A stretch of DNA of 64,000 nucleotides from Anthoceros angustus (GCA_010909165.1 VJWM01000118.1:832470-896469), one strand, 5' to 3'; shown: positions 2,968-31,966, numbered from the stretch's first letter. The notes: a model not told the origin generated them from the sequence alone. Numbers and translations: made by a program.

Positions 2968-5900
2968 TCATGCGCAATCCTCCGCCTTGCACTTACTTAT
3001 GCACTCGCAGAGCCATGTCGCTTTCCTTTCCTTGTATCTCACTGTGTGAGTGGAGCCCACATACGGCCCTCGAGGGATTTTAGAATGTCCTCGAGTCTCG
3101 ACCAGGCATCCACATTGACATCCTCTTCATTCACGGCCACCATGTTAGGCAATTGTTGGTGGTTGGACAATGTTTCCCCTACCAATCCGATCACTGTCAT
3201 TGGCATAGCTCCTGCCCTATTTGCAAAATCTGGTATAGCGTTTCCCAAACCAGCAGCTACATGCAAGCCTGCCTTGGCTAGAAACACAAGCAAGTTAGCA
3301 CTCATCATGTAAAGTCAATCCACTTGTAGTTTTACCGATACAACCAAAGGATAACCAGTTGTCCTTGTACAATATGGTTCGCCACCTCTCTCCTCACACA
3401 TGAGATGCAAATGAACCGCCTTGCCAACCTGAATCAAAGCCATAAACCTTTCTCGGAATGATACATCATCACTACCAAAGAAAGGACGACGAGGCATGGT
3501 GGAACCATGATACCCTATAATATCATCCATGTTGCGTTTCAAAGCCCTCAATGTTTCCTTTTTCGACTCCATCATCTTAGCTTCAACTGATCTAATCAAC
3601 TCCACTAACTCCTTTTGATTACTGTCCAGTTTGTCCATCACCTGCGAGTGCTGTATATCAAGCTTTTGCGATATTATAGTAAGATTGTCCAACAAAGTTC
3701 TCATATTTTCCACGGAGAGGTCAGAGTGACTTCGTAAAGGAACTGTAGACACACTGTGACTTGCTGCAGCCTTGGAGCTTGTGACCATATGTGCGACTGT
3801 TTCAAGATCCGTTGTCACCTTCAATACACAATCTTTTTGCCGTTCATAAAACTCAGTATTCCTCTGCACTATATCTACCAAGTATTTCGCATCTACAAAT
3901 TCTTCCACCTTACGAGATATCCTGATCCCATTTACTTCATCGCCAATAGCAGGCCAAGAATGCATAAAATCCAATATGTTTCTGGTAACAAAATACCCGT
4001 CACCACATTGCAAAGTTTGCTCTTCATCTAGAAGAAACTCCGTTAAATCCGTCTCAAGGTATGCTTGGTTCCGTCTCAATGTGCAAGGTATCAAGCAAGT
4101 TACACAGGAAGGGTTGATGAAAGCTCACAATGCAACTCCTGGACAACCCCTAGGTGAAGCACAAAAGTTTCTCAATTCTTCAAGGATATGTTGTCGCATA
4201 AATGTATACGCAAAACCATGACGTTGTGCTGACTTGACAAGTATATCAACAAAATCGCCAATCGCTCCTCCACCGCTGTATTCAATAAAGATATCCATAC
4301 CATTGTAGCCTATGGAAATAAGATTGTAGCCAAATCTGTATTGATGAGACTGCATTCGCAAGTCCACCTTGGAAAAAAGACGATTTCGCAAAACCACCTT
4401 AAGAAAAGAAACAAAGTTAGTGCAACGTTCAAGTACAAGTTATCACCCATGTCAACCTCTTCACCTCGAAAACTTGCAAGGAAAAGACAAAGATATACCT
4501 GAAACCTCGGGAAAAAACCCTCAGTTAAGAAAGTTCGAACATCTTGACATTGTAAGCGGCGGCCTATAAACTCATAGTTTACATCATTGTCATATGTAGT
4601 TGGCCATTGTAGAGATCTTTCACTATTCGCGCCTACATGCCGATTGATGGTTGTTGGAATGAAAAACCCTTGCGTTTCCATACCTAGAGGTGCCTCGTAA
4701 CATAACTCCAACTCCAACATAATATTCACCAAGTCTTGAGTTTCAAGTCCGGTATAGTCCTTTGAAAAGTTAGTAAGAACCGACTGAGTCTCTCGTTTAC
4801 AAATCCTTCAGTAGTAAGGGGTAAGAATGGACTATGTGATTGTATGAAATGACCTAGAAAGTTGTGAGTTATCCAATTCGGATTAATTACTATTATATTT
4901 TCATTTTTTAACTGGATAATTTTTCCAACATCATGAAGATAGGATGAAATGGCAGATATTATGTTCTTTTGGTGATCTGACGGAAACTGATTCAACTCCT
5001 CAAGTTGTTGCACACAATAGCTTCCAAATTCCTCTTGTTGCATCAAAGGTTGAGAAGGCTTCTTAGATACCCACTGTATCAAGGCCTTACTCAATTTCTC
5101 ACATACATAAGGAACTAATTTTGAGTCTTCACATGCAATTTTTAAGGTTTTAAATACCTCACGTAATACGTTCTTTATGCATTTCAATGAATAAGCCTTG
5201 ATAATTTCTGGTTTTGGAATTACATCTATTAAATCTGAAAACTCTTTTGTTACATCCTTCATTTGTGTGTTTAATAAACTTTCTATAAATTGTTCTTTTT
5301 TTTTAAATTTATCTAGGTACGTAATTATAACCAATAATTTTGGTTTCACTACACTTCCCTGCTTGACATTAGAGGCAATAAATGTTAGCCAATACTTCAA
5401 TTCATCCTCAAACTTTGTTTTCATATCTTCGTAAGACATAATTTTTCCCGACACATGGTCAAAGGGACTAAACACGAACGAAAATAGACAAGCTTGGTGA
5501 ATATTAGGAAAGAGATAATCATGGAGAATGCGAAATTCATCTTGGCCGGCCAGATCCCAAATACTTACTTGCAGATCTTCGTCATTGTCGAATATATGTT
5601 CGATTTCTATCCCTTTTGTCATCTCCCACGGCAGGCGCACATTTGTCATACAAGTTGCCACCCTTCTCCATTTTTGAGAATAGCAGACCATACTTCGACG
5701 TATTGTACTCTTCCCTGCAATATTTATCAATGATAATATTAGATATTCACAAAGAGCAAATAATCTTGAAGTTTTCTATAGCAAAGGATGGAATTACCTG
5801 CACGTGGCGATCCACAAAGAAAGAATCTACCCACTTTTGGCCATACAAATTTGAAGACTTGCCGATAAAATGCAGGTAAATATGCAACCTGTCGATTATT

Positions 5901-14832: not shown

Positions 14833-15829
14833 TGAAGTTGGCATGTGCTGACCTGTTGTAGGTGAGTTGGAAGAGCTCCAGAAAGAATTTCTTGTGGTTG
14901 AAGGTAGCTAGGCTGGGATCCGGTTGAGCCCTGTTATTGCCAAGCCCAGCCCGCATCACTCGTTTTGACTAAGATTGTTTGAACAGATGTGCGAAGAAGC
15001 AAAGTGGTGGCCACAGGACGCTTGCCTGCTCAAGAGGGGAAAGTTTCTGGCATGGTAAGCTACCTTTCAAAGACCTACCTATGCTTTGTTAGCAACATTC
15101 ACATGCTTATTGTTTCCTGAAATCCTCTCTTCAGGCTGGGCACCTTGAGGATATTGTAGGAGACAAGATGTTCACGGCCTACACGCACTTTGGGCAGAGG
15201 TAATAGCTGACTCTCGTTTTGGGCCTCATGATAAATCATTCTTATTTTTTCATATACGGTATATATTTTTATACTGGTATATCCAATAAAACCCGTCAAC
15301 ACCAGTCACATATAAAGAAGAAACTTGGACAAAAGAAGTATGAATGACTAGACTTGATCAGCTATGTGCCTTAAGTAATACCTCTATCACATTGACAAAA
15401 CTTGTACTCATCGGCCAAACTTGCTTGAGAGCCATGGCGGGCAATAAGATTGAAAAACAATTGCTATGACCATAAAAGCAGCAGCAAGCAAGAGGAAGTG
15501 CGTGAATATTTCTGGATAAAACCTTCGCGTGCTAAAGAGCGAGCAAGATGCCCAGCTTTTAGCAATCCTTATACGCTTCTCACAACGCACAATGGTAGGG
15601 ATGCACACTGCACAATTCCATTTCACATGGCAGAGCTTCTGGGCGCGGATGGGGTATGCATGTGGGAGGATCGAAGGAGTCGAGGGTTTGATGTGAATGG
15701 GCGCCAAAAATTTCATCAGGGACCGGGAATCCGAGTCGGGCAGGGTTTTGGTAGGGTTTAACGAAGTCGATGCGAGCGCGAGTGCGGGAGCCCGGTGGAG
15801 GAAGGGAAGTGACATGAAGTGAGCGTTGC

Positions 15830-17806
15830 ATGTCGGCAGGCGGGCTGGGCAGAGTGTGCGGCGCTGTGCTGATGCCCCTTTGGCAGAGATGGCAGTCTCT
15901 GGGCCTGGGACCCGTGCTGGGCTACGGGTGTGTGGGGAAGGCGAGCGGGGCGGCCGAGTGCGGGGCTGTGGCCAGGGAGAGCGTGGCATGGCCGGCGTTT
16001 GTGCGGAGCCTGGCGAGTGCCGTGGAGCGGGAGAGGCAGGAGGCGACGAGCAAGGAGGATGTGGAGGCGGGGCTGCTGAGCACCAGCATCGGCATCGGCA
16101 GCGCTCCGACCAGGTCCAGCTTGGTGGAGCGGGACGCCGTGTCCTGGGCTCTGCGGGTCTACCTCTGTAAGCACAAGAATGTGGCGGCTGCGGACGCCGT
16201 GTGGATCGTGGAAGGCGCGCCGTTGTTCAGCAGGAAGCTGGTGGCGGCTGTGAAGGCGGGGATCCCGCCGGGGAGGTTAGGGCACACGAGCCATCTGAAC
16301 AAGGAGACGTGCCGGGAGCATGCGGAGAACATTTTCATGCGCGACGGCGTGAACGTGCTGGAACCGTTTCTGGAGAGCTTGGGAGTGGATGCGGAGGATT
16401 TCGAGGATCTGGCGGGCTCGGTGACGCTGGACCTGGCCGAGCTGGTGGCCAGCGTGAAGGTGCTGGAGGAGCTCGGGATCCAGAGGAAGCATATCTGGCG
16501 GCTGCTGGAGCGGGATCGGAAGCTGCTGAATTGCACGGCCGCGGATCTGGAGGTGGGAGTGAAGGCGCTGTCGGATCTAGGGTTTGCGCGGCGGGAGATC
16601 GGGGAGATCGCGTACAAGTGTCCCGCGCTGCTGCGGATAGGGTTGGCGGATGTGGCGGTGGAGCTGGATGAGGAGGACGGGGATGGAGGTGAGGAGGTGG
16701 TTGGGAAGGACGGGCTTGCTTTGGTGAGGAAGAATGTGCGGTATCTGAAGGAGGAGTTAGGGTTTTCCGGGAAGCAGATCATCAAGCTTGTGCAGAGCTA
16801 CACCAAGACGTCCAGGATTCTGTTCAGCGACATGGCCGTTGTGATGCAGCCGAATGTGCAGCTGTTGAGGGAGATCGGGTTGACGAATGAGAATATCCGG
16901 AGAGTGTTAGGGTATTCTCCGGCAGTGATGAACTTGACGCGGGACACCATCGCTGCCAAGATCCAGTATTTGGAGAGCTTGGGAGTGGACAGTGTCGGGA
17001 AGGTGATCACTCGGTTTCCTGCTATCCTGCAGTATAACATCAGCAGCAATGTGGAGCCGAAGATTGACTACTTGAAGAGCCTGGGAGTGAAGTCGTCGGG
17101 GTTGGGGAAGGTGCTGACGCAGTGTCCTTCCGTGCTGGGGTACAATCTTGATGGGAAGCTGAAGCAGACGGTATCGTTTCTCGAGAGCTTGGGGCTGAAG
17201 GGGGACAGGTTGGCCAGACTCATCGTGACCAAACCGCCGGTGCTTGCGTACTCGGTGGATGGAAGCTATGCGGAGACGCGGGAGTTTTTGATGAACCTAG
17301 GGTTGGAGCCGGGCACGAAGGCCATGGCCAGGGCCTTCGCTGCCTCCTTCAGCAGCTCTGTTGTGGCGATGCAGGCCCGCTTTGAGTTCTTTGTTGGCAG
17401 GGGCTTTCCGCGGGAGTGGGTGCGGGATATGCTCAGGGCTCAGCCGTCGCTGCTGTGTTTGAGCGAGAACAATCTTCTGTGTAAACTGAAATTTTTTGAA
17501 GGCGTGTTAGACCTGTCTGAGATGCCTCCATCCAGGGTCGCTATCTTCCTTTCCTTCGGCCTTGATACCAGGGTGAAGCCCAGGTTCAGAGTCATGTCAT
17601 GGCTTAAACAACATGGTCATCTGCCCATGAATTACCCCTTTCACCGCATGCTGGACGCGAGTGAACCCAAGTTCGCCAACAAGTATGTTGCGCCTTATCC
17701 TGGGGCTCTGGCAATTTTCCGGGAAGCATGTGGCAGTGGAGATCTCTTTTCACAGCAAGGTTGTGAGACGACTCAAGTGTCTTCCGACTCGGATCCTGTT
17801 CTATGA
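15830..17806 (+). CDS. mTERF family protein (organellar transcription termination factor family), intronless, 658 aa
   Basis: Intact ATG-initiated ORF with repeated mTERF motifs (YLESLGV..VGKVITRFPAILQYNI..NVEPKIDYLKSLGV; FLSFGLDTRVKPRF) and an N-terminus resembling a targeting peptide. Confidence 0.93.
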   Translation: MSAGGLGRVCGAVLMPLWQRWQSLGLGPVLGYGCVGKASGAAECGAVARESVAWPAFVRSLASAVERERQEATSKEDVEAGLLSTSIGIGSAPTRSSLVERDAVSWALRVYLCKHKNVAAADAVWIVEGAPLFSRKLVAAVKAGIPPGRLGHTSHLNKETCREHAENIFMRDGVNVLEPFLESLGVDAEDFEDLAGSVTLDLAELVASVKVLEELGIQRKHIWRLLERDRKLLNCTAADLEVGVKALSDLGFARREIGEIAYKCPALLRIGLADVAVELDEEDGDGGEEVVGKDGLALVRKNVRYLKEELGFSGKQIIKLVQSYTKTSRILFSDMAVVMQPNVQLLREIGLTNENIRRVLGYSPAVMNLTRDTIAAKIQYLESLGVDSVGKVITRFPAILQYNISSNVEPKIDYLKSLGVKSSGLGKVLTQCPSVLGYNLDGKLKQTVSFLESLGLKGDRLARLIVTKPPVLAYSVDGSYAETREFLMNLGLEPGTKAMARAFAASFSSSVVAMQARFEFFVGRGFPREWVRDMLRAQPSLLCLSENNLLCKLKFFEGVLDLSEMPPSRVAIFLSFGLDTRVKPRFRVMSWLKQHGHLPMNYPFHRMLDASEPKFANKYVAPYPGALAIFREACGSGDLFSQQGCETTQVSSDSDPVL

Positions 17807-24785: not shown

Positions 24786-27700
24786 ATGGGAGGGGGTTCG
24801 ACTGGCTGGCAGCAGCCAGAACAAGGCTTGCCCGTTTACGACCAGCCAGGCATGGCTGTCATCGACGAACCACCTCGATTTCTTTACCCCCTCTCGGGGG
24901 GTGACGTTTGCCCGAATGAGGACTTCGTTGAAGCCTTCGATGATACTATGATTGGGGGTGAGGAGCTCGCTGTAAGTTCTGGAACGGCGGATGTCGTCAT
25001 GATCCAGCTTGGGGATGCCGCTCGGCGCATCCTGGAAGAAGAAAGGGCCGTGGATGTTCTCGGCAGCCCTGAGAAGCTACTTACTCATCTGACCAAGGGA
25101 GGCAGCTACACAGGAGGTAGCACAGTTGTCCACAAGCTCATGCATGTCACCTCTGACAAGCTTGACTTAAGCTTTGTGGAGAAGGTGATCATACCTGCTC
25201 ATGAGATCCGGAATCTCTGCAATGCTATATCACCATCCGCCGCTTCACTTCGTGATGGCAGGAGCCAGTTGGACTTTGAGCTCCTAAACAAGACCGCTAT
25301 GCATGTGGTTGGTCTGTATGGGAGCAAACGAGTGCTCATTGACATCTTCAGTAGGCTGGGCTTCTCTTGCGTTGTTACTCTGTTGAAGGCAGAACAGCTG
25401 GAAGCTGGTATCTATGGCTTCCAAAACGAAAAGATTTTTTACGTATTTTACTGGCATCTTGGGCAGCGAATGGACGAGGCTTCGAGAAAGAATGTTTCTT
25501 GTAATTTCATTCGCTATGTTATGGACCTAACTGGAACAATTTATCTTTGTCTGGATGGCAAGGATATGGAGGCCTCCTTAGAGACTGGCGGCCATTCAGG
25601 CGCTGCTACAAGAAAGCAACGAACTCAGAGGCTCCAAATTTCTGTGATAAAGAAGTCGGAGAACGACTTGAATATGAGTAAAGGGTTTCACATAAATCCT
25701 TCCAACGTACTCGGTGACGGATGGTTGCCGGGGGCACAGACTGTAGGCAGAATTGATTTGAGGCCCAGGCTTTCTAGTTCTCTTCACCGTTGTGCCGTTG
25801 TCACAGCAACACGTTGCCTTCCTCGTGCCGTCCACCACGAGCAGTCTAAAAGACTGGGGTGAAGAACTCAGAGCTAGTCCGGGGATGGTCAAGCAAGTAT
25901 AATGTTGATGTGATGCAGTTATCCGATGCACACTTGATTCACTTAGTGGAATATGGTGATCTGGAAGGAAGTAATGGCTATAGGTCATTGATAGAAGATG
26001 TCAACCTCAAAAGAGAAGCTCACCGACAGAAGTTCTGGAAGATGGAAGAGTTGTTAACAACAGAGGAAGGCAAAGTTCTAAGCATTTTCGAAAGAGCTCA
26101 GCAGGCCTATCTCGAACTGTCTCATCCTTGGGAGGAGTCGTTTCTTAGAAACACTGCTTCATCCTCCCCAGTCGACCAAGGGCAGAAGTGTACCCCAGGT
26201 ACTGCAGAACAAGGTGAGTCGCAAAGCACCTCCAGCAAAGCGTCTCCAGACAGCCAGCTGCTCGACGCACACATTGCGTTGTCCGAACTGTGGACCAGAG
26301 AAAGTGGCACCCCAGGTTCGGCTCCTGCATCGTTGATCCTTGTTGGTTCTAAAATCAGTATACATCTACAAAACCGCAACGTTATGACAATCGGAGGCGT
26401 GATGGAGTTTGAGATTGGAAGTCCCAACTCAAAACACGGCCCTATACTGTATGGGGAGGAGTTTGCACTCAAAGGCTCCAGTGCATCCATTTCAGGAGTG
26501 TTTATTGCGTATTCTGTGGATGGCGTTTGCCCGACCGGGCCGGTGCTGTCATCCCAATATGTCAGAATCAAAGTCAAGGGTAACACTCCAGTCTCTGCAT
26601 TTTTTGAGGAAATGCAAAAGACACAGAGGTTGGAGCTCGTCTTGCGAACGGCCTCACCAAAAGGAATGCATGACTGGATGGCGTCATATGGGACACCGGT
26701 ATTTCCCAGCCTGGACAAGAGAGTGGTGGACCTGGCCTTCGTGATCGGCAATCCGGTTTTCTTTGGTCCGCAAGTTTCTCGGGAGACTCACTCAAATGTC
26801 CTCCGCCTCTCCAAGTCCAATGACGCCTTGCTTCATTTCCAGAAGAACTTTTCCGAAGAGAATCTGCACGCGCTGCTTTCGAAAGCAAAACAAGCCCAAC
26901 CGGACTATTCTTCTGAACGCAGGCAGGATTATCTCCGCAACCTTGACTCATCTCGAAGAGCAGAGCTGATTGCAGTTTGCAGAAAGGTGTATGAAGAAGC
27001 CTGCTCGCAGTTCTCGAAGAGAATAACTTGCATGGTAAAGAAGTTCTTTACTCCATGATAAAGCAGAGGATGGAACTGGAGAGGATTGTTGGATCTGCTT
27101 CACTGGAGACGAATTTTGAGACAGCACGCACTGAGTTTCTCAAGGACTTGCGTAGCCGCCTCTCAAGTGGAAAGCTTCCAGATATGCGCACCCTGGCAGT
27201 CACAAGTTGCACCTTGCATAGCAAACGGTGGTACCAGGCTCGTACGCATTCGGGGAACGAGGAAATTGAATTGCATTTCGTCACCGAGGAAGTGGAAAGT
27301 GAGCGAGTTTCATGGAGGATGGCTGAGCTGACCCCAATGAAGAAAGACCTGGATGCTTTGTTGCAGAAGGAAACGCATCTTGTCGTTCCTGGGTGCTCGA
27401 CGAATTACAAGCTAATTGACGTGGATCCCAAGTTTGAGAGACTATCCTTGGTATTTCCTATGAAGTCGGGCGAAGTATTTGTGTTTGTGGAAGACGACAG
27501 CCAATCCTCGATCCGACTCTACCTGCTTCCCAAGCTGGGTCCAGAGATACAAGCCTCAAACCCGATCAAGACGTTCGGGAGAGGCCGGGACATTGTGGCA
27601 GTGGATGAAGCAGCGAGGCTTGTAGCTTTCTATGACAAGACTCTGTGCAAAATCAGCATCTTCCGATTTGATGAGAGCTTTCGGCATTTTGAATGGGGTG

Positions 27701-30700
27701 GTGTTGAAATCCTGCTTTCAGATTATGCCGGCAGCAGGACGTTAAGGTCCATGATGTTCATACCTGGGAAGCGAGAGATTCTTCTGGTTGACAGCGACCT
27801 TAAAGTGCGCGCATGTGAGATAAGCCAGCCAGCGATGATGAGGCCGAGACACATTTTGCTGCCAGGTCCCGACCACAAGATGTGTATTAGCCCGGATGGG
27901 TCGTGCCTCCTTGTGTTCTATAGCTCAGGCTAGTCCTTCCAGTGCTGGGAAGGAGGACGTGCTGGATGATTGCGAGATTGAATGTGAAAGTGACAGTCAG
28001 GAAGCTAGGAGTGCAATGACGACAAGGTGCTGAAGCTTGACGTCTATCTCCTTGATGGGACGATGTCTCTTTTGAAGACGTTGAAGGTGAGCGACATCTC
28101 CGGTGATGTTCAAAGTATTGATGTGAGTACAGTCGCATTTGGGTCGCAGAGTCATCTGGTCCTTATCGACACATTACGACCGGACAGAGGGATCTGTTCA
28201 CAGCGCCTGGACGTGACGTCGGCCTCTGAGGTCTGCCAGCTCCAGGCGCTGAGCAAAACTGGTAACAAAGACGACGTTGGAAGTAAGACCGAGGTGCAGA
28301 AGAATGTAAGCTGTCCATCTTTGGAGTATGTGCACCATGCCTTTGACAAGTACGCTGTCAGTCCTCCATTGATCTCTGGAGAAAGGGAACTTTGTGTACA
28401 TGTTGTCTTGGAGGGCGAGCCGCAACCGAAGGCGGTCCAGTTCAAAGAAATGAGCACTCGCTACCTTGAGTCCTGTATCGAGAAGCTTAAACGCGACAAG
28501 GGGAAGAGCTTCTCCAATTTGAGTGTATCATTCGCATCAGACTTTGTAGGCAAGTACATTTTCAAGCAGACCCTTCTTGGGACCAGGAGCCGAGGAACTG
28601 TGTCTCTATGGGAGATTGGGTGCGCCTTCTGGTGTCCCTGGTTCCTGTCCAGATAGCTCGAGCAGAGAATAATGGGTTGGAAGCCTCTTATCGACGGCCT
28701 GCAAATCTCATCGAACCTGAATTATGCTGACGCAGTGGGACTCGCAGAAGCATTACGGTTTGGTTTCTACGATTCAGTGCTAACACAGTGGAAGGGCCCT
28801 ATCAAGGTCATATCCTCCATGGGTAAGCAGAGCAGCGGGAAGTCGTATCTCCTGAACCACCTTAGTGGGTCCTTGCTGGATGTTGCTGGAGGAAGATGCA
28901 CTGACGGGGTTTGGATGACCATGCGTGCTTCCAAGAGCTGCCTGTATGTGTTACTGGATTTTGAGGGCTTGGGGAGCTTTGAAAGGAGCGAGCAAGAGGA
29001 CATGTTGCTCTCCATTCTGAATGCGGCAATGAGTAACATAACGATTTTCAACAAGAAGGTAACACATTCTGTAGGTCAGAACCCATGAATTCATAGGACT
29101 TGCCTTGTGGTTGCAAGACGGAGAACTGACACTGCTTAACGTCATGATCGCAGGACTTTCATTTGGACAAGGAAACCGAGTCCGTCTTTGAGCGTTTCCA
29201 AAATGGTGTAAGCATTATTAAGGAAGACAGTCGGCTTTTCAAGGCCTGTTCTACATGGCCATCAAGGATGTGGACACAGCTGATATCGAGGACCTGAAAG
29301 CAGAGTTCTATACAAAGATTCAGCAGATATGCAGCAAGTCCCAGGACAATTTCCTGACGAAGATGTATGGTGGCGTGGTGGAGGTTGCAGCTATGCCTCC
29401 ATTCCAACGCACTGAGTACCATGACAGTGTGGCTGATATTGCTGCAGCAGTGGAAGATATAAAGCCTATCCATCACAGCGGGAAAAGTTTCATGGTGGAC
29501 TTGAAACTTGTCATTGCTCAAATCAGTGCCAGGGACTGGTCTCCCCTTGACACCAAGCGAATAGCTTTAAGACTGGAGCTTCTGAGGAAGCACTTCATGA
29601 CAGCCGTTAACCTTGGTAGGCTAGCAAGTGACTCTGATAATGTGCTGGTGAATTTCGAGACTCAGGAGCCAGTTGCTGAGTCGGCTTTACTGGTTGAGGG
29701 TCGAACCTTCAGCCTTGGTGACACAGGCTTGGAGCTTTCGCCTCGACAGGAAAGCCAGGTGATGGGCGATGTTCTTGAGAACTTGAGGCAACATTTCCAG
29801 AATGGGTACCGGCGGACAGGTGCGGATGACGAGGTTTGGCATTCAACTTATGAGAAGTTCCTCATGGCACTGGCGGATAGAAGGAAGCAGAGAGTTCTAG
29901 ACTGGCTCCGTTGGAACACGTCTGAGTTCCAGGATGATGGAGACGTTCAGAAACTTCTCCTGGAAACGGTTGTTGTCCTGGCAGAACTGAAGCAAAGGCT
30001 CTCGGTGTGCAGCAGTAAGTGCAAGATATGTTTCCTGCGATGTGTTCGGGAGAAATCTCACCCAGCTGGAACGTCGTTCCATTCGTGTTTGGGAGGCCAC
30101 CGCTGTCAAGAGAGTTGCTCTTTCTGCCTTATAGAATGCCCGGAGCAAAAAGGGTTCGCAAACTTTTGCTCGGATCTCAGTGGACACGAAGGTCCACATG
30201 CCTGTAAGCAGAAGAGTCATACATGTGGACAGGATTGCAACTTGCTGCACAGGTCTTCGAATTGCAACGCATCATGCGCATTGAAGCCTGGGCATGCTGG
30301 AGACCATATGTGCAACACCAAACAGCACATCTGTGACCAGGGGTGCTCGCTTTCTGGGTGCAACAACTCATGTGTGATTCCTTTGGATTCAGGGGACCAT
30401 GACCGTCACATATGTCAGGAGCGAATGTGTCCAATGGATTGCAAAATGGAGGGCTGTAACAGGAAGTGCGGGTCGGAAGACCATTTTCACTCCCTTCGTT
30501 CCAATACACACTTATGCGGAAACGAACACACATGCCCTGGGAAATGCGAGTCCCTTGGGATCTGCCAGATTACGACAGAGGTTGTGAAGGTGTCCAAGAC
30601 CTTCAGAGGTAAGAGATCAATTTTTGAGTACGAGCATGTTTCAGAGCAGAATGGGATCAGGAAAGCGTGTTGCATCGCCATTCCCCCCGGACAGGAAACT

Positions 30701-31966
30701 CACTCGGGCGATCATTGTCATACCTCAAATCCGAATGCAGTTCATTTCTGTGAGACAAAGTGCCCAGCATGTGGTTACTTCTGCAATTTACCTATTGGTC
30801 ACGCTGGTGTCCACGACACCACGCATGGAAACATGCGGGATGTCCATTTCGCAGCAGAGTCCGAGCAGATTGACATTGATGACAGAAAATATGAATGGGG
30901 GGAATCTGGAGTTGCAGAAATGTGCAATATGCATTGTAAAGCTCAGGGAAGAGGGCACATTCACCTGATCCCATGTCTTGCTCATGTAAATCCGAAGGGA
31001 CCGTGTGCTGAAGGATTATATGATGGAGCAAGACATCAGACCCAGGAGTATGGTCCAGACAAGGCTGTTGCAAAAGATGAGATGCAGCATGGAGCTTACT
31101 GGAAGCGAATGAGGTTCAAGGACCCGTGCAACGATGAAGATCAGAAGCAGTTCGAGCTCTGCAATCACTTCTGCGGTTCGGATGATCATGTTCCAGCTGC
31201 CACTTCTGTGAAGAATGCCACTCAATCTCGGTCCTTCTGTACAGAGAAATTGTGGCACACTCCAGTTTCAAGGACTGGATCTTCTTCAACCGCAGGCTAT
31301 GTGACAGAAGACGGGCATTCCTTCGCTTGCGACCATCTGAAGAACACTGCGAACCATGTAGTGTTCGTCATAGACAGATCAGGCTCAATGGGTTCTTCTG
31401 ACATCACGCCAACCTTGGCGAAGCTCGCCCAGAGGCTCAACAACCGTCTGGGATGCGTGTATGAAGCCATTGTTCGTTTCATTGTGACTCGCAAGCAAGC
31501 AGGACAGCCAGACGTGGTGTCAGTCATCCTCTTTGACACATCTGGCTCCATTGTGGTGGAACGGCAACCGATATCCGAGCACCTCGTGGACTTGCTGCTG
31601 CTTTACAGAGTAGGAGGAGGGACCACTTACTCAAGCGGACTCACCTTAGCTGAGCAGGTTTTGCAACGGGGCTTGTATGATTCCTCCATGCAAGCCAAGC
31701 ATCCTGCTGTTGTGTTTCTGAGTGATGGTGGAAACAACGGAGGCAGCAACCCTCTATCCATCATCACAAAGATGAAGGATATGGACCACAGACTTGTATT
31801 CCACACAATTCTCTTCGGAAGAGATCATGTGGACCAGGACATCCTTCGGAGAATGGCCAAAGCAGGGGACGGAACCTTTCAGGTCAGTATCGACGAAGTG
31901 CAGCTGGCCAGGAGCTTTGAAGGGCTGGCCAGAAGCTTGCGTACCAAGGTGGCATCTCTGATGTAG
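24786..31966 (+). CDS. Very large (~2,360 aa) protein: unknown N-terminus, propeller-like region, GBP/RHD3-type GTPase, Cys/His-rich repeats, C-terminal VWA domain
   Basis: Consecutive ORFs 24783-25862, 25859-27058, 27028-27933, 28027-28656, 28672-29088 and 29255-31966 join via 1-bp shifts and one GT-AG intron (29059-29153). GTPase motifs G1 GKQSSGKS, G2 RCT and G3 DFEG. VWA MIDAS motif DRSGSM...GGGT...FLSDG. Confidence 0.85.

What the first reader, a model, noticed from the sequence alone, without database searches (positions are those of the whole stretch)
24786..31966. Giant GBP/RHD3-type GTPase with Cys/His repeats and a VWA domain: candidate uncharacterised plant defence protein
Seen: about 7.1 kb of coding sequence with only one evident intron, whereas TYW1 and CstF-77 nearby are intron-rich. 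The order is an unknown N-terminus, a beta-strand-rich propeller-like stretch (DIVAVDE..LVAFYD, MMFIPGKREILLVDSD, MCISPDGSCLLVF) and a GTPase with intact GKQSSGKS/RCT/DFEG motifs. It continues with about 440 aa of HxC..HxC...C..C repeats and a VWA domain with a complete MIDAS. Established: DxEG in G3 is the signature of the dynamin-related GBP/atlastin/RHD3 clade, whose GBP members act in cell-autonomous immunity. Inference: the architecture is not a classical angiosperm GBPL or RHD3. From memory, the GTPase flanks (DWVRLLVSLVPVQIA; SFERSEQEDMLLSILNAAMSN) resemble uncharacterised basidiomycete GTPase-VWA proteins. It may be an oligomerising sensor/effector with a metal-binding spacer and a VWA ligand-capture end, with a patchy or horizontally acquired distribution.
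Basis: partly seen in the sequence, partly recalled or inferred. Interest (0 to 1): 0.82.

Follow-up and report, generated by a model that had tools for sequence, protein, structure and literature searches.

The report
Giant GTPase-VWA gene with frame breaks
This non-flowering plant carries a 7-kb gene for a giant molecular-switch protein related to animal defence GTPases. It belongs to an old, unstudied family found from algae and mushrooms to conifers but not seen in flowering plants, and this copy's reading frame is broken at five to seven single-base spots that may be sequencing errors.

Summary
Window 24786-31966 (+) encodes about 2,320 aa with one intron (29059-29153). The order is a disordered start (MGGG), an alpha/beta N1 domain with a weak GBP/atlastin-like G fold, helices and a coiled coil, a beta-propeller, a GBP/Sey1/VLIG-type GTPase with G1-G4 intact, a 442-aa Cys/His array and a VWA domain with a full MIDAS.

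A family profile maps colinearly across all frames. That shows five certain one-base frame breaks plus one ambiguous stretch (27922-28020). There are no in-frame stops, and 156 of 157 family-invariant residues are kept. No reads were available, so assembly error (my estimate 0.65) versus a very young pseudogene (0.35) stays open.

Full-length kin occur in gymnosperms, ferns, Selaginella, mosses, liverworts, streptophyte, red and glaucophyte algae, dinoflagellates, oomycetes and Agaricomycetes. None of the 112 hits was an angiosperm. Land-plant copies form one clade that broadly follows plant phylogeny, so recent transfer from fungi is not supported.

Six literature searches found no paper on the family. 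A defence role is plausible but untested.

The scan flagged this family before on other DNA of the same genome: a six-copy array (s1-300107) and a head-to-head pair (s1-384802). This locus is a further paralogue.

The parts
24786..25061 (+). Start codon and low-confidence, probably disordered N-terminus beginning MGGG
   Evidence: Cryptomeria P0016 aligns from its residue 1 to 24786. The MGGG start is shared with Ginkgo, Cryptomeria, Calypogeia and Selaginella relatives. pLDDT is below 50.
25062..25907 (+). N1 alpha/beta domain with a G-domain-like fold and a conserved non-canonical G-h-Y-G-S-K loop, possibly a pseudo-GTPase. It spans frame break J1.
   Evidence: The window's own model has a core pLDDT above 90. 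The top 10 VIA matches are all GBP/atlastin/Sey1/RNF112/SMG8-9 G folds, Z 6.5-4.2. The best Atlas match is a GTPase domain. There is no sequence-level link to the true G domain and no Pfam hit.
25848..25870 (+). Frame break J1 (frame 0 to 2, net -1 nt)
   Evidence: Profile positions 285 and 295 lie on either side with about 8 codons between them.
25925..27160 (+). Helical region, small beta domain (26399-26636) and long coiled-coil helices (26645-27160). It spans break J2.
   Evidence: Model of relative P0012, mapped to the window.
27037..27043 (+). Frame break J2 (frame 2 to 1, net -1 nt)
   Evidence: Profile positions 640 and 639 overlap at 27040-27046.
27187..28246 (+). Beta-propeller of about 26 strands.
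   Evidence: The relative's model is all-beta over residues 711-1049 with pLDDT mostly above 90. The 50 Foldseek rows shown are, as far as their titles identify them, WD40, NHL or other beta-propeller proteins or complexes that contain them, E 1.5e-6 to 1.7e-5 over about 300-460 aligned columns.
27922..28020 (+). Ambiguous stretch J3. It is either two compensating one-base shifts read through an acidic frame-2 linker, or an intron of about 95 nt.
   Evidence: Frame 1 has five stops here while frame 2 is open and acidic. The family has a variable linker at this place, profile positions 935-955. In Selaginella the equivalent stretch is an open in-frame acidic linker.
28570..28578 (+). Frame break J4a (frame 1 to 0, net -1 nt)
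   Evidence: Profile positions 1135 and 1136 abut across the frame change.
28578..29700 (+). GBP/Sey1/VLIG-type large GTPase domain, with its end approximate. G1 GKQSSGKS is at about 28822, switch I RCT at about 28894, G3 DFEG at about 28957 and G4 IKD at about 29264.
   Evidence: Pfam gives URGCP_GTPase 1e-10, RHD3 4e-7 and GBP 9e-7. The family profile against PDB gives GBP5 1.5e-10 and SEY1 1.1e-9. The motifs are invariant in 54-56 relatives.
28678..28680 (+). Frame break J4b (frame 0 to 1). One extra G in TTG(G)AAG.
   Evidence: DNA alignment with the Selaginella locus L001.
29059..29153 (+). The only clear intron: 95 nt, GT..AG, phase 0, inside the G domain
   Evidence: All relatives skip it without losing residues. 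Selaginella has an intron at the same position.
29240..29243 (+). Frame break J6 (frame 0 to 2). One G is missing in AAGG(G)CCTG.
   Evidence: Selaginella reads AAG GGT CTG TTC here in one frame.
30008..31333 (+). Cys/His-rich array of 442 aa, presumed zinc-binding
   Evidence: Alignment A2 (45 eukaryotic relatives) has 41 invariant and 46 nearly invariant columns, most of them Cys or His. There is no Pfam hit, whole or in units, and no PDB hit by profile.
31358..31963 (+). VWA domain with a complete MIDAS (DRSGS, T, D) and a conserved C-terminal tail
   Evidence: Pfam VWA_2 scores 34.1 bits against a cut-off of 27, and VWA 28.1 against 23.8. The MIDAS residues are invariant or nearly so across relatives.

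Best explanation
Shown: this is a real, full-length paralogue of an ancient, uncharacterised eukaryotic family of giant (about 2,000-2,500 aa) dynamin-superfamily GTPases. The family architecture, conserved from algae, oomycetes and mushrooms to conifers, is a G-fold-like N1 domain, a coiled coil, a beta-propeller, a GBP/Sey1/VLIG-type G domain, a helical region, a Cys/His array and a MIDAS VWA domain.

Inferred, P about 0.65: in the living plant the gene is intact, and the five to seven one-base frame breaks are local assembly or polishing errors.

Inferred from the families involved, P about 0.6: like GBPs, atlastin/Sey1 and GVIN1, the G domain dimerises on GTP and drives nucleotide-dependent self-assembly of a large scaffold. 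The propeller at one end and the VWA MIDAS at the other capture partner or target peptides. The invariant Cys/His array is a rigid zinc-stabilised module for protein or nucleic-acid contact. The conserved MGGG start may carry a myristoyl membrane anchor.

Inferred, P about 0.35: the biological role is cell-autonomous defence or conflict.
For: - Identity and architecture: the profile maps colinearly over the whole gene. Full-length relatives align from residue 1 to the last residue.
- G domain: G1-G4 and MIDAS are invariant and kept. The family profile hits GBP and Sey1.
- Other domains: propeller fold; N1 G-like fold; Cys/His columns invariant across 45 eukaryotes.
- Intact rather than dead: no in-frame stop in about 2,316 codons. 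156 of 157 columns that are at least 90% conserved are kept, placing the window in the upper fifth of 72 sequences. Its terminal branch of 0.39 is no longer than those of its neighbours. Every segment after a shift is still strongly conserved. The two breaks that could be pinned are a single G gained or lost in a G run. Earlier scan notes, not tested here, report the same kind of breaks in other multi-copy genes of this assembly, with RNA reading one of them intact.
- Mechanism by analogy: human GVIN1 forms a coat on cytosolic bacteria and is predicted to have two large GTPase domains (bioRxiv 10.1101/2025.03.24.645074). vWA MIDAS sites capture peptides and are coupled to NTPases in MoxR-vWA and GTPase-centred conflict systems (PMC7159879).
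- Defence leaning: paralogue clusters occur in Cryptomeria (locus tags SUGI_0690900 to 0691520 on one chromosome), Riccia, Gautieria and Lactarius, and in this genome according to earlier notes. The family has been lost repeatedly in whole lineages. Some relatives carry a RING/B-box front end.
Against: - No RNA or DNA reads could be laid on the locus, so neither expression nor the true sequence at the breaks is known.
- The breaks are not spread as uniform assembly error would be. Seven fall in 4.4 kb, and none in the next 2.7 kb of the gene or in the 2-kb mTERF ORF nearby.
- The family is unusually conserved for an immune gene. Plant and fungal copies are 30-35% identical over 1,100 aa, with 157 near-invariant columns. 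That fits a conserved cellular machine as well as it fits a defence effector.
- The N1 G-fold match is weak (Z at most 6.5) and has no sequence support.
- Zinc binding, GTPase activity, oligomerisation and myristoylation are all inferred.
Confidence: 0.55

Rival explanations
1. This copy is a young pseudogene. The one-base indels are real mutations in a birth-and-death multigene family, and the locus makes no full-length protein.
For: There are five certain frame breaks plus one ambiguous stretch. They cluster in the first 4.4 kb, while the neighbouring 662-aa mTERF ORF and the last 2.7 kb of the gene are clean, which argues against a uniformly error-prone assembly. No run holding this stretch, and no RNA, was listed. 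The family is multi-copy in this genome according to earlier notes, so losing one copy would cost little.
Against: There is no nonsense codon in about 2,316 codons. 156 of 157 invariant residues are kept and the branch is not lengthened. If seven indels had accumulated neutrally, I would expect a few stops and several hits on invariant residues (my rough estimate, taking about ten substitutions per indel). Two pairs of opposite shifts lie only about 100 nt apart, which looks more like a local consensus artefact. Earlier notes report similar breaks elsewhere in this assembly that RNA reads through (not tested here).
Confidence: 0.35
2. The family is a conserved housekeeping machine, for example membrane or organelle remodelling as by Sey1/atlastin, or NTPase-plus-vWA assembly and quality control as by midasin or MoxR. 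It is not a defence system.
For: Conservation is very high across eukaryotic supergroups. The nearest solved G domains include the Sey1 and atlastin membrane-fusion GTPases. NTPase-vWA pairs act as chaperone-like remodellers in midasin and MoxR systems (PMC7159879).
Against: The family was not found in angiosperms, and all fungal hits were Agaricomycetes, so it is dispensable for basic cell biology. Tandem, lineage-specific expansions are more typical of conflict genes. No Sey1/RHD3 family-level score was reached.
Confidence: 0.3
3. The gene entered land plants by horizontal transfer from fungi or oomycetes.
For: The distribution is patchy, and the full-length architecture is shared with Agaricomycetes and Phytophthora.
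Against: Land-plant sequences form one clade (SH-aLRT 100) whose internal order runs from bryophytes and a lycophyte to ferns to gymnosperms. Its nearest neighbours are glaucophyte and red-algal sequences. Fungi sit on a separate branch of length 1.7. The intron position is shared with Selaginella. The tree is a quick search without an outgroup.
Confidence: 0.03

Closest known systems
Guanylate-binding proteins (human GBP1/2/5)
   Same: The large G domain has GxxxxGKS, a switch-I Thr, D-x-E-G and a K/R-D G4 motif. The family profile matches GBP5, GBP1 and GBP2 at E 1e-10 to 1e-8. GBP is the one Pfam G-domain model scored above its cut-off (28.8 against 21.1).
   Different: It is four times larger and has no GBP C-terminal helical domain hit and no CaaX. 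It adds the N1 domain, the coiled coil, the propeller, the Cys/His array and the VWA domain. Only about 90-120 residues of the G domain align.
VLIG / GVIN1 / URGCP giant GTPases of animals
   Same: URGCP_GTPase is the best-scoring Pfam model (E 1e-10). Some relatives are named 'VLIG-type G domain' in UniProt. Both are giant proteins. A second, N-terminal G-like domain may echo the two large GTPase domains predicted for GVIN1.
   Different: The score of 41 bits is below the family cut-off of 55 and covers only model positions 186-285 of 396. GVIN1 is not described with a propeller, a Cys/His array or a VWA domain. Interferon control has no plant counterpart.
Sey1 / RHD3 / atlastin membrane-fusion GTPases
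   Same: The same G-domain clade. Sey1 matches at E 1.1e-9 over profile positions 54-218. Atlastin-1, atlastin-3 and Sey1 are among the structural matches of N1.
   Different: The RHD3_GTPase score (30-36 bits) is below its cut-off of 42.4. The architecture is unrelated, and no RHD3/Sey1 stalk or membrane anchor was recognised.
NTPase-vWA remodelling and conflict systems (MoxR-vWA ternary systems, GTPase-centred systems, midasin)
   Same: An NTPase is combined with a MIDAS vWA peptide-capture domain. Some bacterial versions also include beta-propellers (PMC7159879).
   Different: Those use AAA+ MoxR or TRAFAC GTPases encoded as separate genes in operons. Here a dynamin-superfamily GTPase and the vWA domain are fused in one eukaryotic polypeptide. 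The likeness is functional only, and no homology beyond the vWA fold was shown.
TRIM-NHL proteins and RNF112
   Same: Some relatives (Cyanophora-like P0035, P0040, Phytophthora P0053 and P0057) start with B-box or RING fingers followed by a coiled coil and a propeller. NHL propellers of Thin and Brat are among the fold matches. RNF112, a RING protein with a GBP-like G domain, is tied with atlastin-1 as the top structural match of N1.
   Different: The window's protein has no RING or B-box. The match to NHL is no better than the match to WD40 propellers.

Membership tests
GBP/atlastin/RHD3-Sey1 clade of large GTPases (dynamin superfamily) | P-loop GxxxxGK[ST], switch-I Thr and G3 D-x-x-G (here D-F-E-G) | tested here: met
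   GKQSSGKS, RCT and DFEG are present. G, K, S, T, D, E and G are invariant in 54-56 relatives.
GBP/atlastin/RHD3-Sey1 clade of large GTPases (dynamin superfamily) | G4 reduced to (R/K)-D instead of N/TKxD (established knowledge of the clade) | tested here: met
   The window has I-K-D. K is in 48 of 54 and D in 54 of 54 relatives.
GBP/atlastin/RHD3-Sey1 clade of large GTPases (dynamin superfamily) | Significant sequence-profile match to solved members | tested here: met
   GBP5 1.5e-10, SEY1 1.1e-9, GBP1 and GBP2 1e-9 to 2e-7.
Pfam GBP (PF02263) | Score at or above the gathering cut-off of 21.1 bits | tested here: met
   28.8 bits for window 28672-29085, but only model positions 17-113 of 264 are covered.
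Angiosperm GBPL / animal GBP full architecture | GBP C-terminal helical domain after the G domain | tested here: not met
   No GBP_C hit in the window's pieces or in full-length relatives at E up to 1.
RHD3/Sey1 (PF05879) | Score at or above the gathering cut-off of 42.4 bits | tested here: not met
   30.1 bits in the window and 24-36 bits in relatives.
VLIG/URGCP (PF25683) | Score at or above the gathering cut-off of 55 bits, covering the 396-position model | tested here: not met
   41.4 bits covering positions 186-285 only. Relatives score 31-41 bits.
VLIG/GVIN1 | Two large GTPase domains in one chain (predicted for human GVIN1) | tested here: inconclusive
   N1 gives coherent but weak G-fold matches (Z 6.5-4.2; Atlas). 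It has a non-canonical GhYGSK loop and no profile similarity to the true G domain.
VLIG/GVIN1 | Induction by infection or immune signalling | not testable with these tools
   No RNA run holding the stretch was listed and nothing could be laid on it.
VWA domain with MIDAS | Pfam VWA or VWA_2 above cut-off, plus DxSxS, T and D | tested here: met
   VWA_2 scores 34.1 against 27 and VWA 28.1 against 23.8. D, S and S are present in 46-49 of 49 relatives, T in 45 of 51 and D in 49 of 49.
Beta-propeller (WD40/NHL-like) | All-beta toroid of four-stranded blades | tested here: met
   Tested on relative P0012, which is about 40% identical here. It has 26 strands over residues 711-1049 with pLDDT mostly above 90. 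The 50 Foldseek rows shown are, as far as their titles identify them, beta-propeller proteins or complexes that contain them. No WD40 or NHL Pfam repeat was detected.
NF-X1-type zinc finger (a resemblance I recalled from memory) | Match to Pfam zf-NF-X1 | tested here: not met
   No Pfam family at E up to 10 for the array as a whole or for five single units. No PDB hit by profile.

The most novel reading that the evidence does not exclude
The family is an ancestral eukaryotic, GTP-driven coat- or cage-forming defence machine: a pseudo-G domain, a propeller sensor, a GBP/VLIG-type G domain, a zinc array and a VWA capture end. It would predate the split of GBPs and VLIGs, survive as expanded gene clusters in non-flowering plants, algae, oomycetes and mushrooms, and have been lost in flowering plants. 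That would be a branch of plant cell-autonomous immunity missing from all angiosperm models.
Probability: 0.25. Interest if true: 0.8.

Novelty: new variant of a known kind. Interest (0 to 1): 0.55.

Why it matters
Giant GBP/VLIG-type GTPases have only recently been shown to act directly on pathogens in human cells (GVIN1). This family would extend that kind of protein, in a much more elaborate and strictly conserved architecture, to plants, algae, fungi and oomycetes. Because it was not seen in angiosperms, it has escaped all standard plant models.

It can be studied in tractable species such as Ceratodon, Ceratopteris, Selaginella, Schizophyllum and Phytophthora. The locus itself adds one more copy to a family the scan has already flagged in this genome. 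It also gives a well-mapped case for testing whether the frame breaks common in this assembly are artefacts.

Tried and rejected
- Reads: the one run offered held none of the stretch, and nothing could be laid.
- Introns as the cause of the frame changes: rejected for five junctions, because the profile positions abut or overlap.
- Paralogues in the window: none.
- Pfam on N1, N2, the propeller region and the Cys/His array, whole and in units: nothing.
- ESM Atlas feature search on N1 and the Cys/His array: only scores of 0.85 or less, uninformative.
- PDB profile searches: none for the Cys/His array and only a chance-level kinesin row for N1.
- Foldseek on N1: nothing at E up to 0.001, although GBP rows appear among the weak hits.
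- hhalign of N1 against the G domain: no similarity.
- NF-X1 zinc-finger membership: not met.
- Transfer from fungi: not supported by the tree.
- Homopolymer context as evidence of sequencing error: short runs are too common for this to count. Only two breaks could be pinned to G runs.
- Literature: six searches, including locus tags of relatives, found no paper on the family.
- CstF-77: not found among ten downstream ORFs.
- Not run: the large representative search and the third word search, because neither would name organisms better.
Full report
**What is there.** The + strand between 24786 and 31966 carries six long stop-free pieces in three frames. I collected relatives, built a profile from 13 full-length land-plant proteins and searched all three frames. 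The hits are strictly colinear:
- frame 0, 25113-25847: profile positions 40-285
- frame 2, 25871-27046: 295-640
- frame 1, 27040-27921: 639-935
- frame 1, 28021-28569: 955-1135
- frame 0, 28578-28685: 1136-1171
- frame 1, 28681-29067: 1170-1298
- frame 0, 29151-29243: 1295-1325
- frame 2, 29234-31963: 1323-2222

Cryptomeria P0016 aligns from its first residue to the ATG at 24786. So this is one gene of about 2,320 codons with the full family architecture.

**Gene structure and breaks.** The gap 29059-29153 is a GT..AG intron of 95 nt in phase 0. All relatives skip it without losing residues. The Selaginella relative has a 57-nt intron at exactly that point, before DFHLD.

At five other junctions the profile positions abut or overlap, so introns are excluded and one-base indels are required. 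DNA alignment with Selaginella pins two of them: a G missing from AAGG(G)CCTG at about 29242, and an extra G in TTG(G)AAG at about 28679.

The stretch 27922-28020 is ambiguous. Frame 1 has five stops there, while frame 2 is open and encodes an acidic Ser-rich linker. The family has a variable linker at this place, and in Selaginella the equivalent stretch is an open acidic in-frame linker that its annotation calls an intron. I therefore lean to two compensating shifts, but an intron of about 95 nt is not excluded.

**Dead or alive.** No reads could be used. The only run offered held none of the stretch.

Sequence-internal evidence favours a gene under selection until now or very recently:
- There is no in-frame stop in about 2,316 codons.
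- 156 of 157 columns that are at least 90% conserved in 71 full-length relatives are kept, better than most database relatives.
- All catalytic motifs are intact.
- The terminal branch is of ordinary length.

Against simple random assembly error, the breaks are clustered. Seven fall in 4.4 kb, and none in the last 2.7 kb of the gene or in the neighbouring 662-aa mTERF ORF. Any artefact must therefore be local.

Earlier notes of this scan describe the same kind of breaks in other multi-copy genes of this assembly, one of which RNA reads intact. I could not test that. My estimate is 0.65 artefact and 0.35 young pseudogene.

**Domains.** For all joined analyses I read the gene through with X at each break.

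- *G domain.* Pfam recognises a GBP-clade G domain: URGCP_GTPase 1e-10, RHD3 4e-7 and GBP 9e-7. Only GBP is above its cut-off. A family profile of the G region hits GBP5, Sey1, GBP1 and GBP2 among solved structures at 1e-10 to 1e-8.
- *VWA.* Pfam also recognises a C-terminal VWA domain. The MIDAS residues are invariant or nearly so across relatives and are all kept in the window.
- *Cys/His array.* The 442-aa array (30008-31333) contains three perfect and several degenerate H-x-C...H-x-C-x3-C...C-x3-C units. Across 45 relatives from plants to fungi it has 41 invariant and 46 nearly invariant columns, most of them Cys or His. It is therefore a conserved, presumably zinc-bound module and not a spacer. 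It matches no Pfam family and no solved structure by sequence.
- *N-terminal half.* An AlphaFold model of the N-terminal 1,144 residues of Cryptomeria P0012 (pLDDT 82) shows a disordered start, an alpha/beta domain (N1), helices, a small beta domain, a 60-residue helix and an all-beta domain of 26 strands. The 50 Foldseek rows shown are, as far as their titles identify them, WD40, NHL or other beta-propeller proteins or complexes that contain them.
- *N1.* The window's own N1 domain models well in its core. It most resembles GBP/atlastin/Sey1/RNF112/SMG9 G folds (Z 6.5-4.2; the best Atlas match is also a GTPase). It has a conserved but non-canonical G-h-Y-G-S-K loop between a strand and a helix. 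It shows no profile similarity to the true G domain. It may be a pseudo-GTPase, which recalls the two large GTPase domains predicted for human GVIN1. This is a lead, not a result.

**Relatives and history.** Full-length relatives with the same order of parts occur in these groups:
- Cryptomeria, with many copies whose locus tags are clustered on one chromosome
- Taxus and Ginkgo
- Ceratopteris and Adiantum
- Selaginella
- Ceratodon, Calypogeia and Riccia
- Mesostigma and Klebsormidium
- a Cyanophora-like glaucophyte and Galdieria
- Symbiodiniaceae
- Stereomyxa and Reticulomyxa
- Phytophthora
- one acoel
- dozens of Agaricomycetes

No angiosperm and no ascomycete was among the 112 hits, although the query was 60% identical to gymnosperm copies. 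The search scored only the 8,000 candidates sharing the most words with the query.

A maximum-likelihood tree of the G-to-VWA part (56 rows, quick search, unrooted) gives these results:
- Land plants form one clade (SH-aLRT 100).
- The window is next to Selaginella (91).
- Ferns and gymnosperms branch in the expected order.
- Glaucophyte and red-algal sequences are the neighbours (92).
- Fungi form a separate long-branched clade.

This fits old vertical descent with many losses and does not fit recent transfer from fungi. Some non-plant relatives carry N-terminal B-box or RING fingers.

**How it probably works.** By homology, the G domain should dimerise on GTP and drive assembly, as in GBPs, atlastin/Sey1 and GVIN1. 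By domain logic, the propeller and the MIDAS VWA domain are the ligand-binding ends. MIDAS sites capture peptides, and NTPases remodel what they hold (PMC7159879). The MGGG start is shared by the window and by relatives from liverwort to Ginkgo. It may be a myristoylation signal; I recall that consensus from memory and did not test it.

A defence role is suggested by kinship with GBP and VLIG, by tandem expansions, by lineage losses and by TRIM-like front ends. The very high conservation fits a housekeeping remodeller equally well. Nothing here tests function.

**Novelty.** Six literature searches found the human GVIN1 work but nothing on this family in plants, algae, fungi or oomycetes. The proteins exist in databases only as hypothetical or 'VWFA domain-containing'.

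The scan itself has already flagged the family in this genome at two other loci: s1-300107, a six-copy array, and s1-384802, a head-to-head pair 86 kb upstream. This locus is a further, possibly broken, paralogue.

I rate the family a new variant of a known kind, namely GBP/VLIG-type large GTPases. It is of moderate to high interest as a family and of lesser interest as an individual locus.

Noticed in passing
window 24786-24797: The protein starts MGGG, as do relatives from Ginkgo, Cryptomeria, Calypogeia and Selaginella. This may be a conserved N-myristoylation glycine, which would give the GTPase a lipid anchor.
   Followed up: partly
window 25311-25328 (N1 residues 176-181): N1 has a strongly conserved G-h-Y-G-S-K loop between a strand and a helix (G 59/62, G 62/62, K 43/62). 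It looks like a shortened GBP P-loop and may mark a pseudo-GTPase or an odd nucleotide site.
   Followed up: partly
L001:5725-5838 (Selaginella GL377573.1): The public Selaginella gene model treats a 114-nt stretch as an intron, although it reads in frame as a propeller strand plus an acidic linker (GLCLLAICKGDEIPDAENFQ...). This is probably an annotation error. It lies at the same place as the window's ambiguous stretch 27922-28020.
   Followed up: partly
window 4729-5775 (-): An ORF with a Roc GTPase domain (Pfam Roc, 2.7e-6) belongs to a ROCO-type gene about 19 kb upstream. Earlier scan notes describe ROCO-caspase fusions in this genome.
   Followed up: no
window 15818-17803 (+): An intact 662-aa single-exon mTERF gene (Pfam mTERF, 3.9e-50). 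It serves as a local control: this part of the assembly has no frame breaks.
   Followed up: partly
A 2OG-Fe(II) oxygenase ORF lies next to it.
   Followed up: no
relatives P0035, P0040, P0053, P0057, P0103: Non-plant family members carry N-terminal B-box and/or RING fingers ahead of the coiled coil and propeller. That gives a TRIM-NHL-like front end fused to the GTPase-Zn-VWA body.
   Followed up: no
relatives P0051, P0052: An acoel worm (Convolutriloba macropyga) has a full-length copy on a long branch, together with unnamed ENA sequences. Whether it is animal, symbiont-derived or transferred is open.
   Followed up: no
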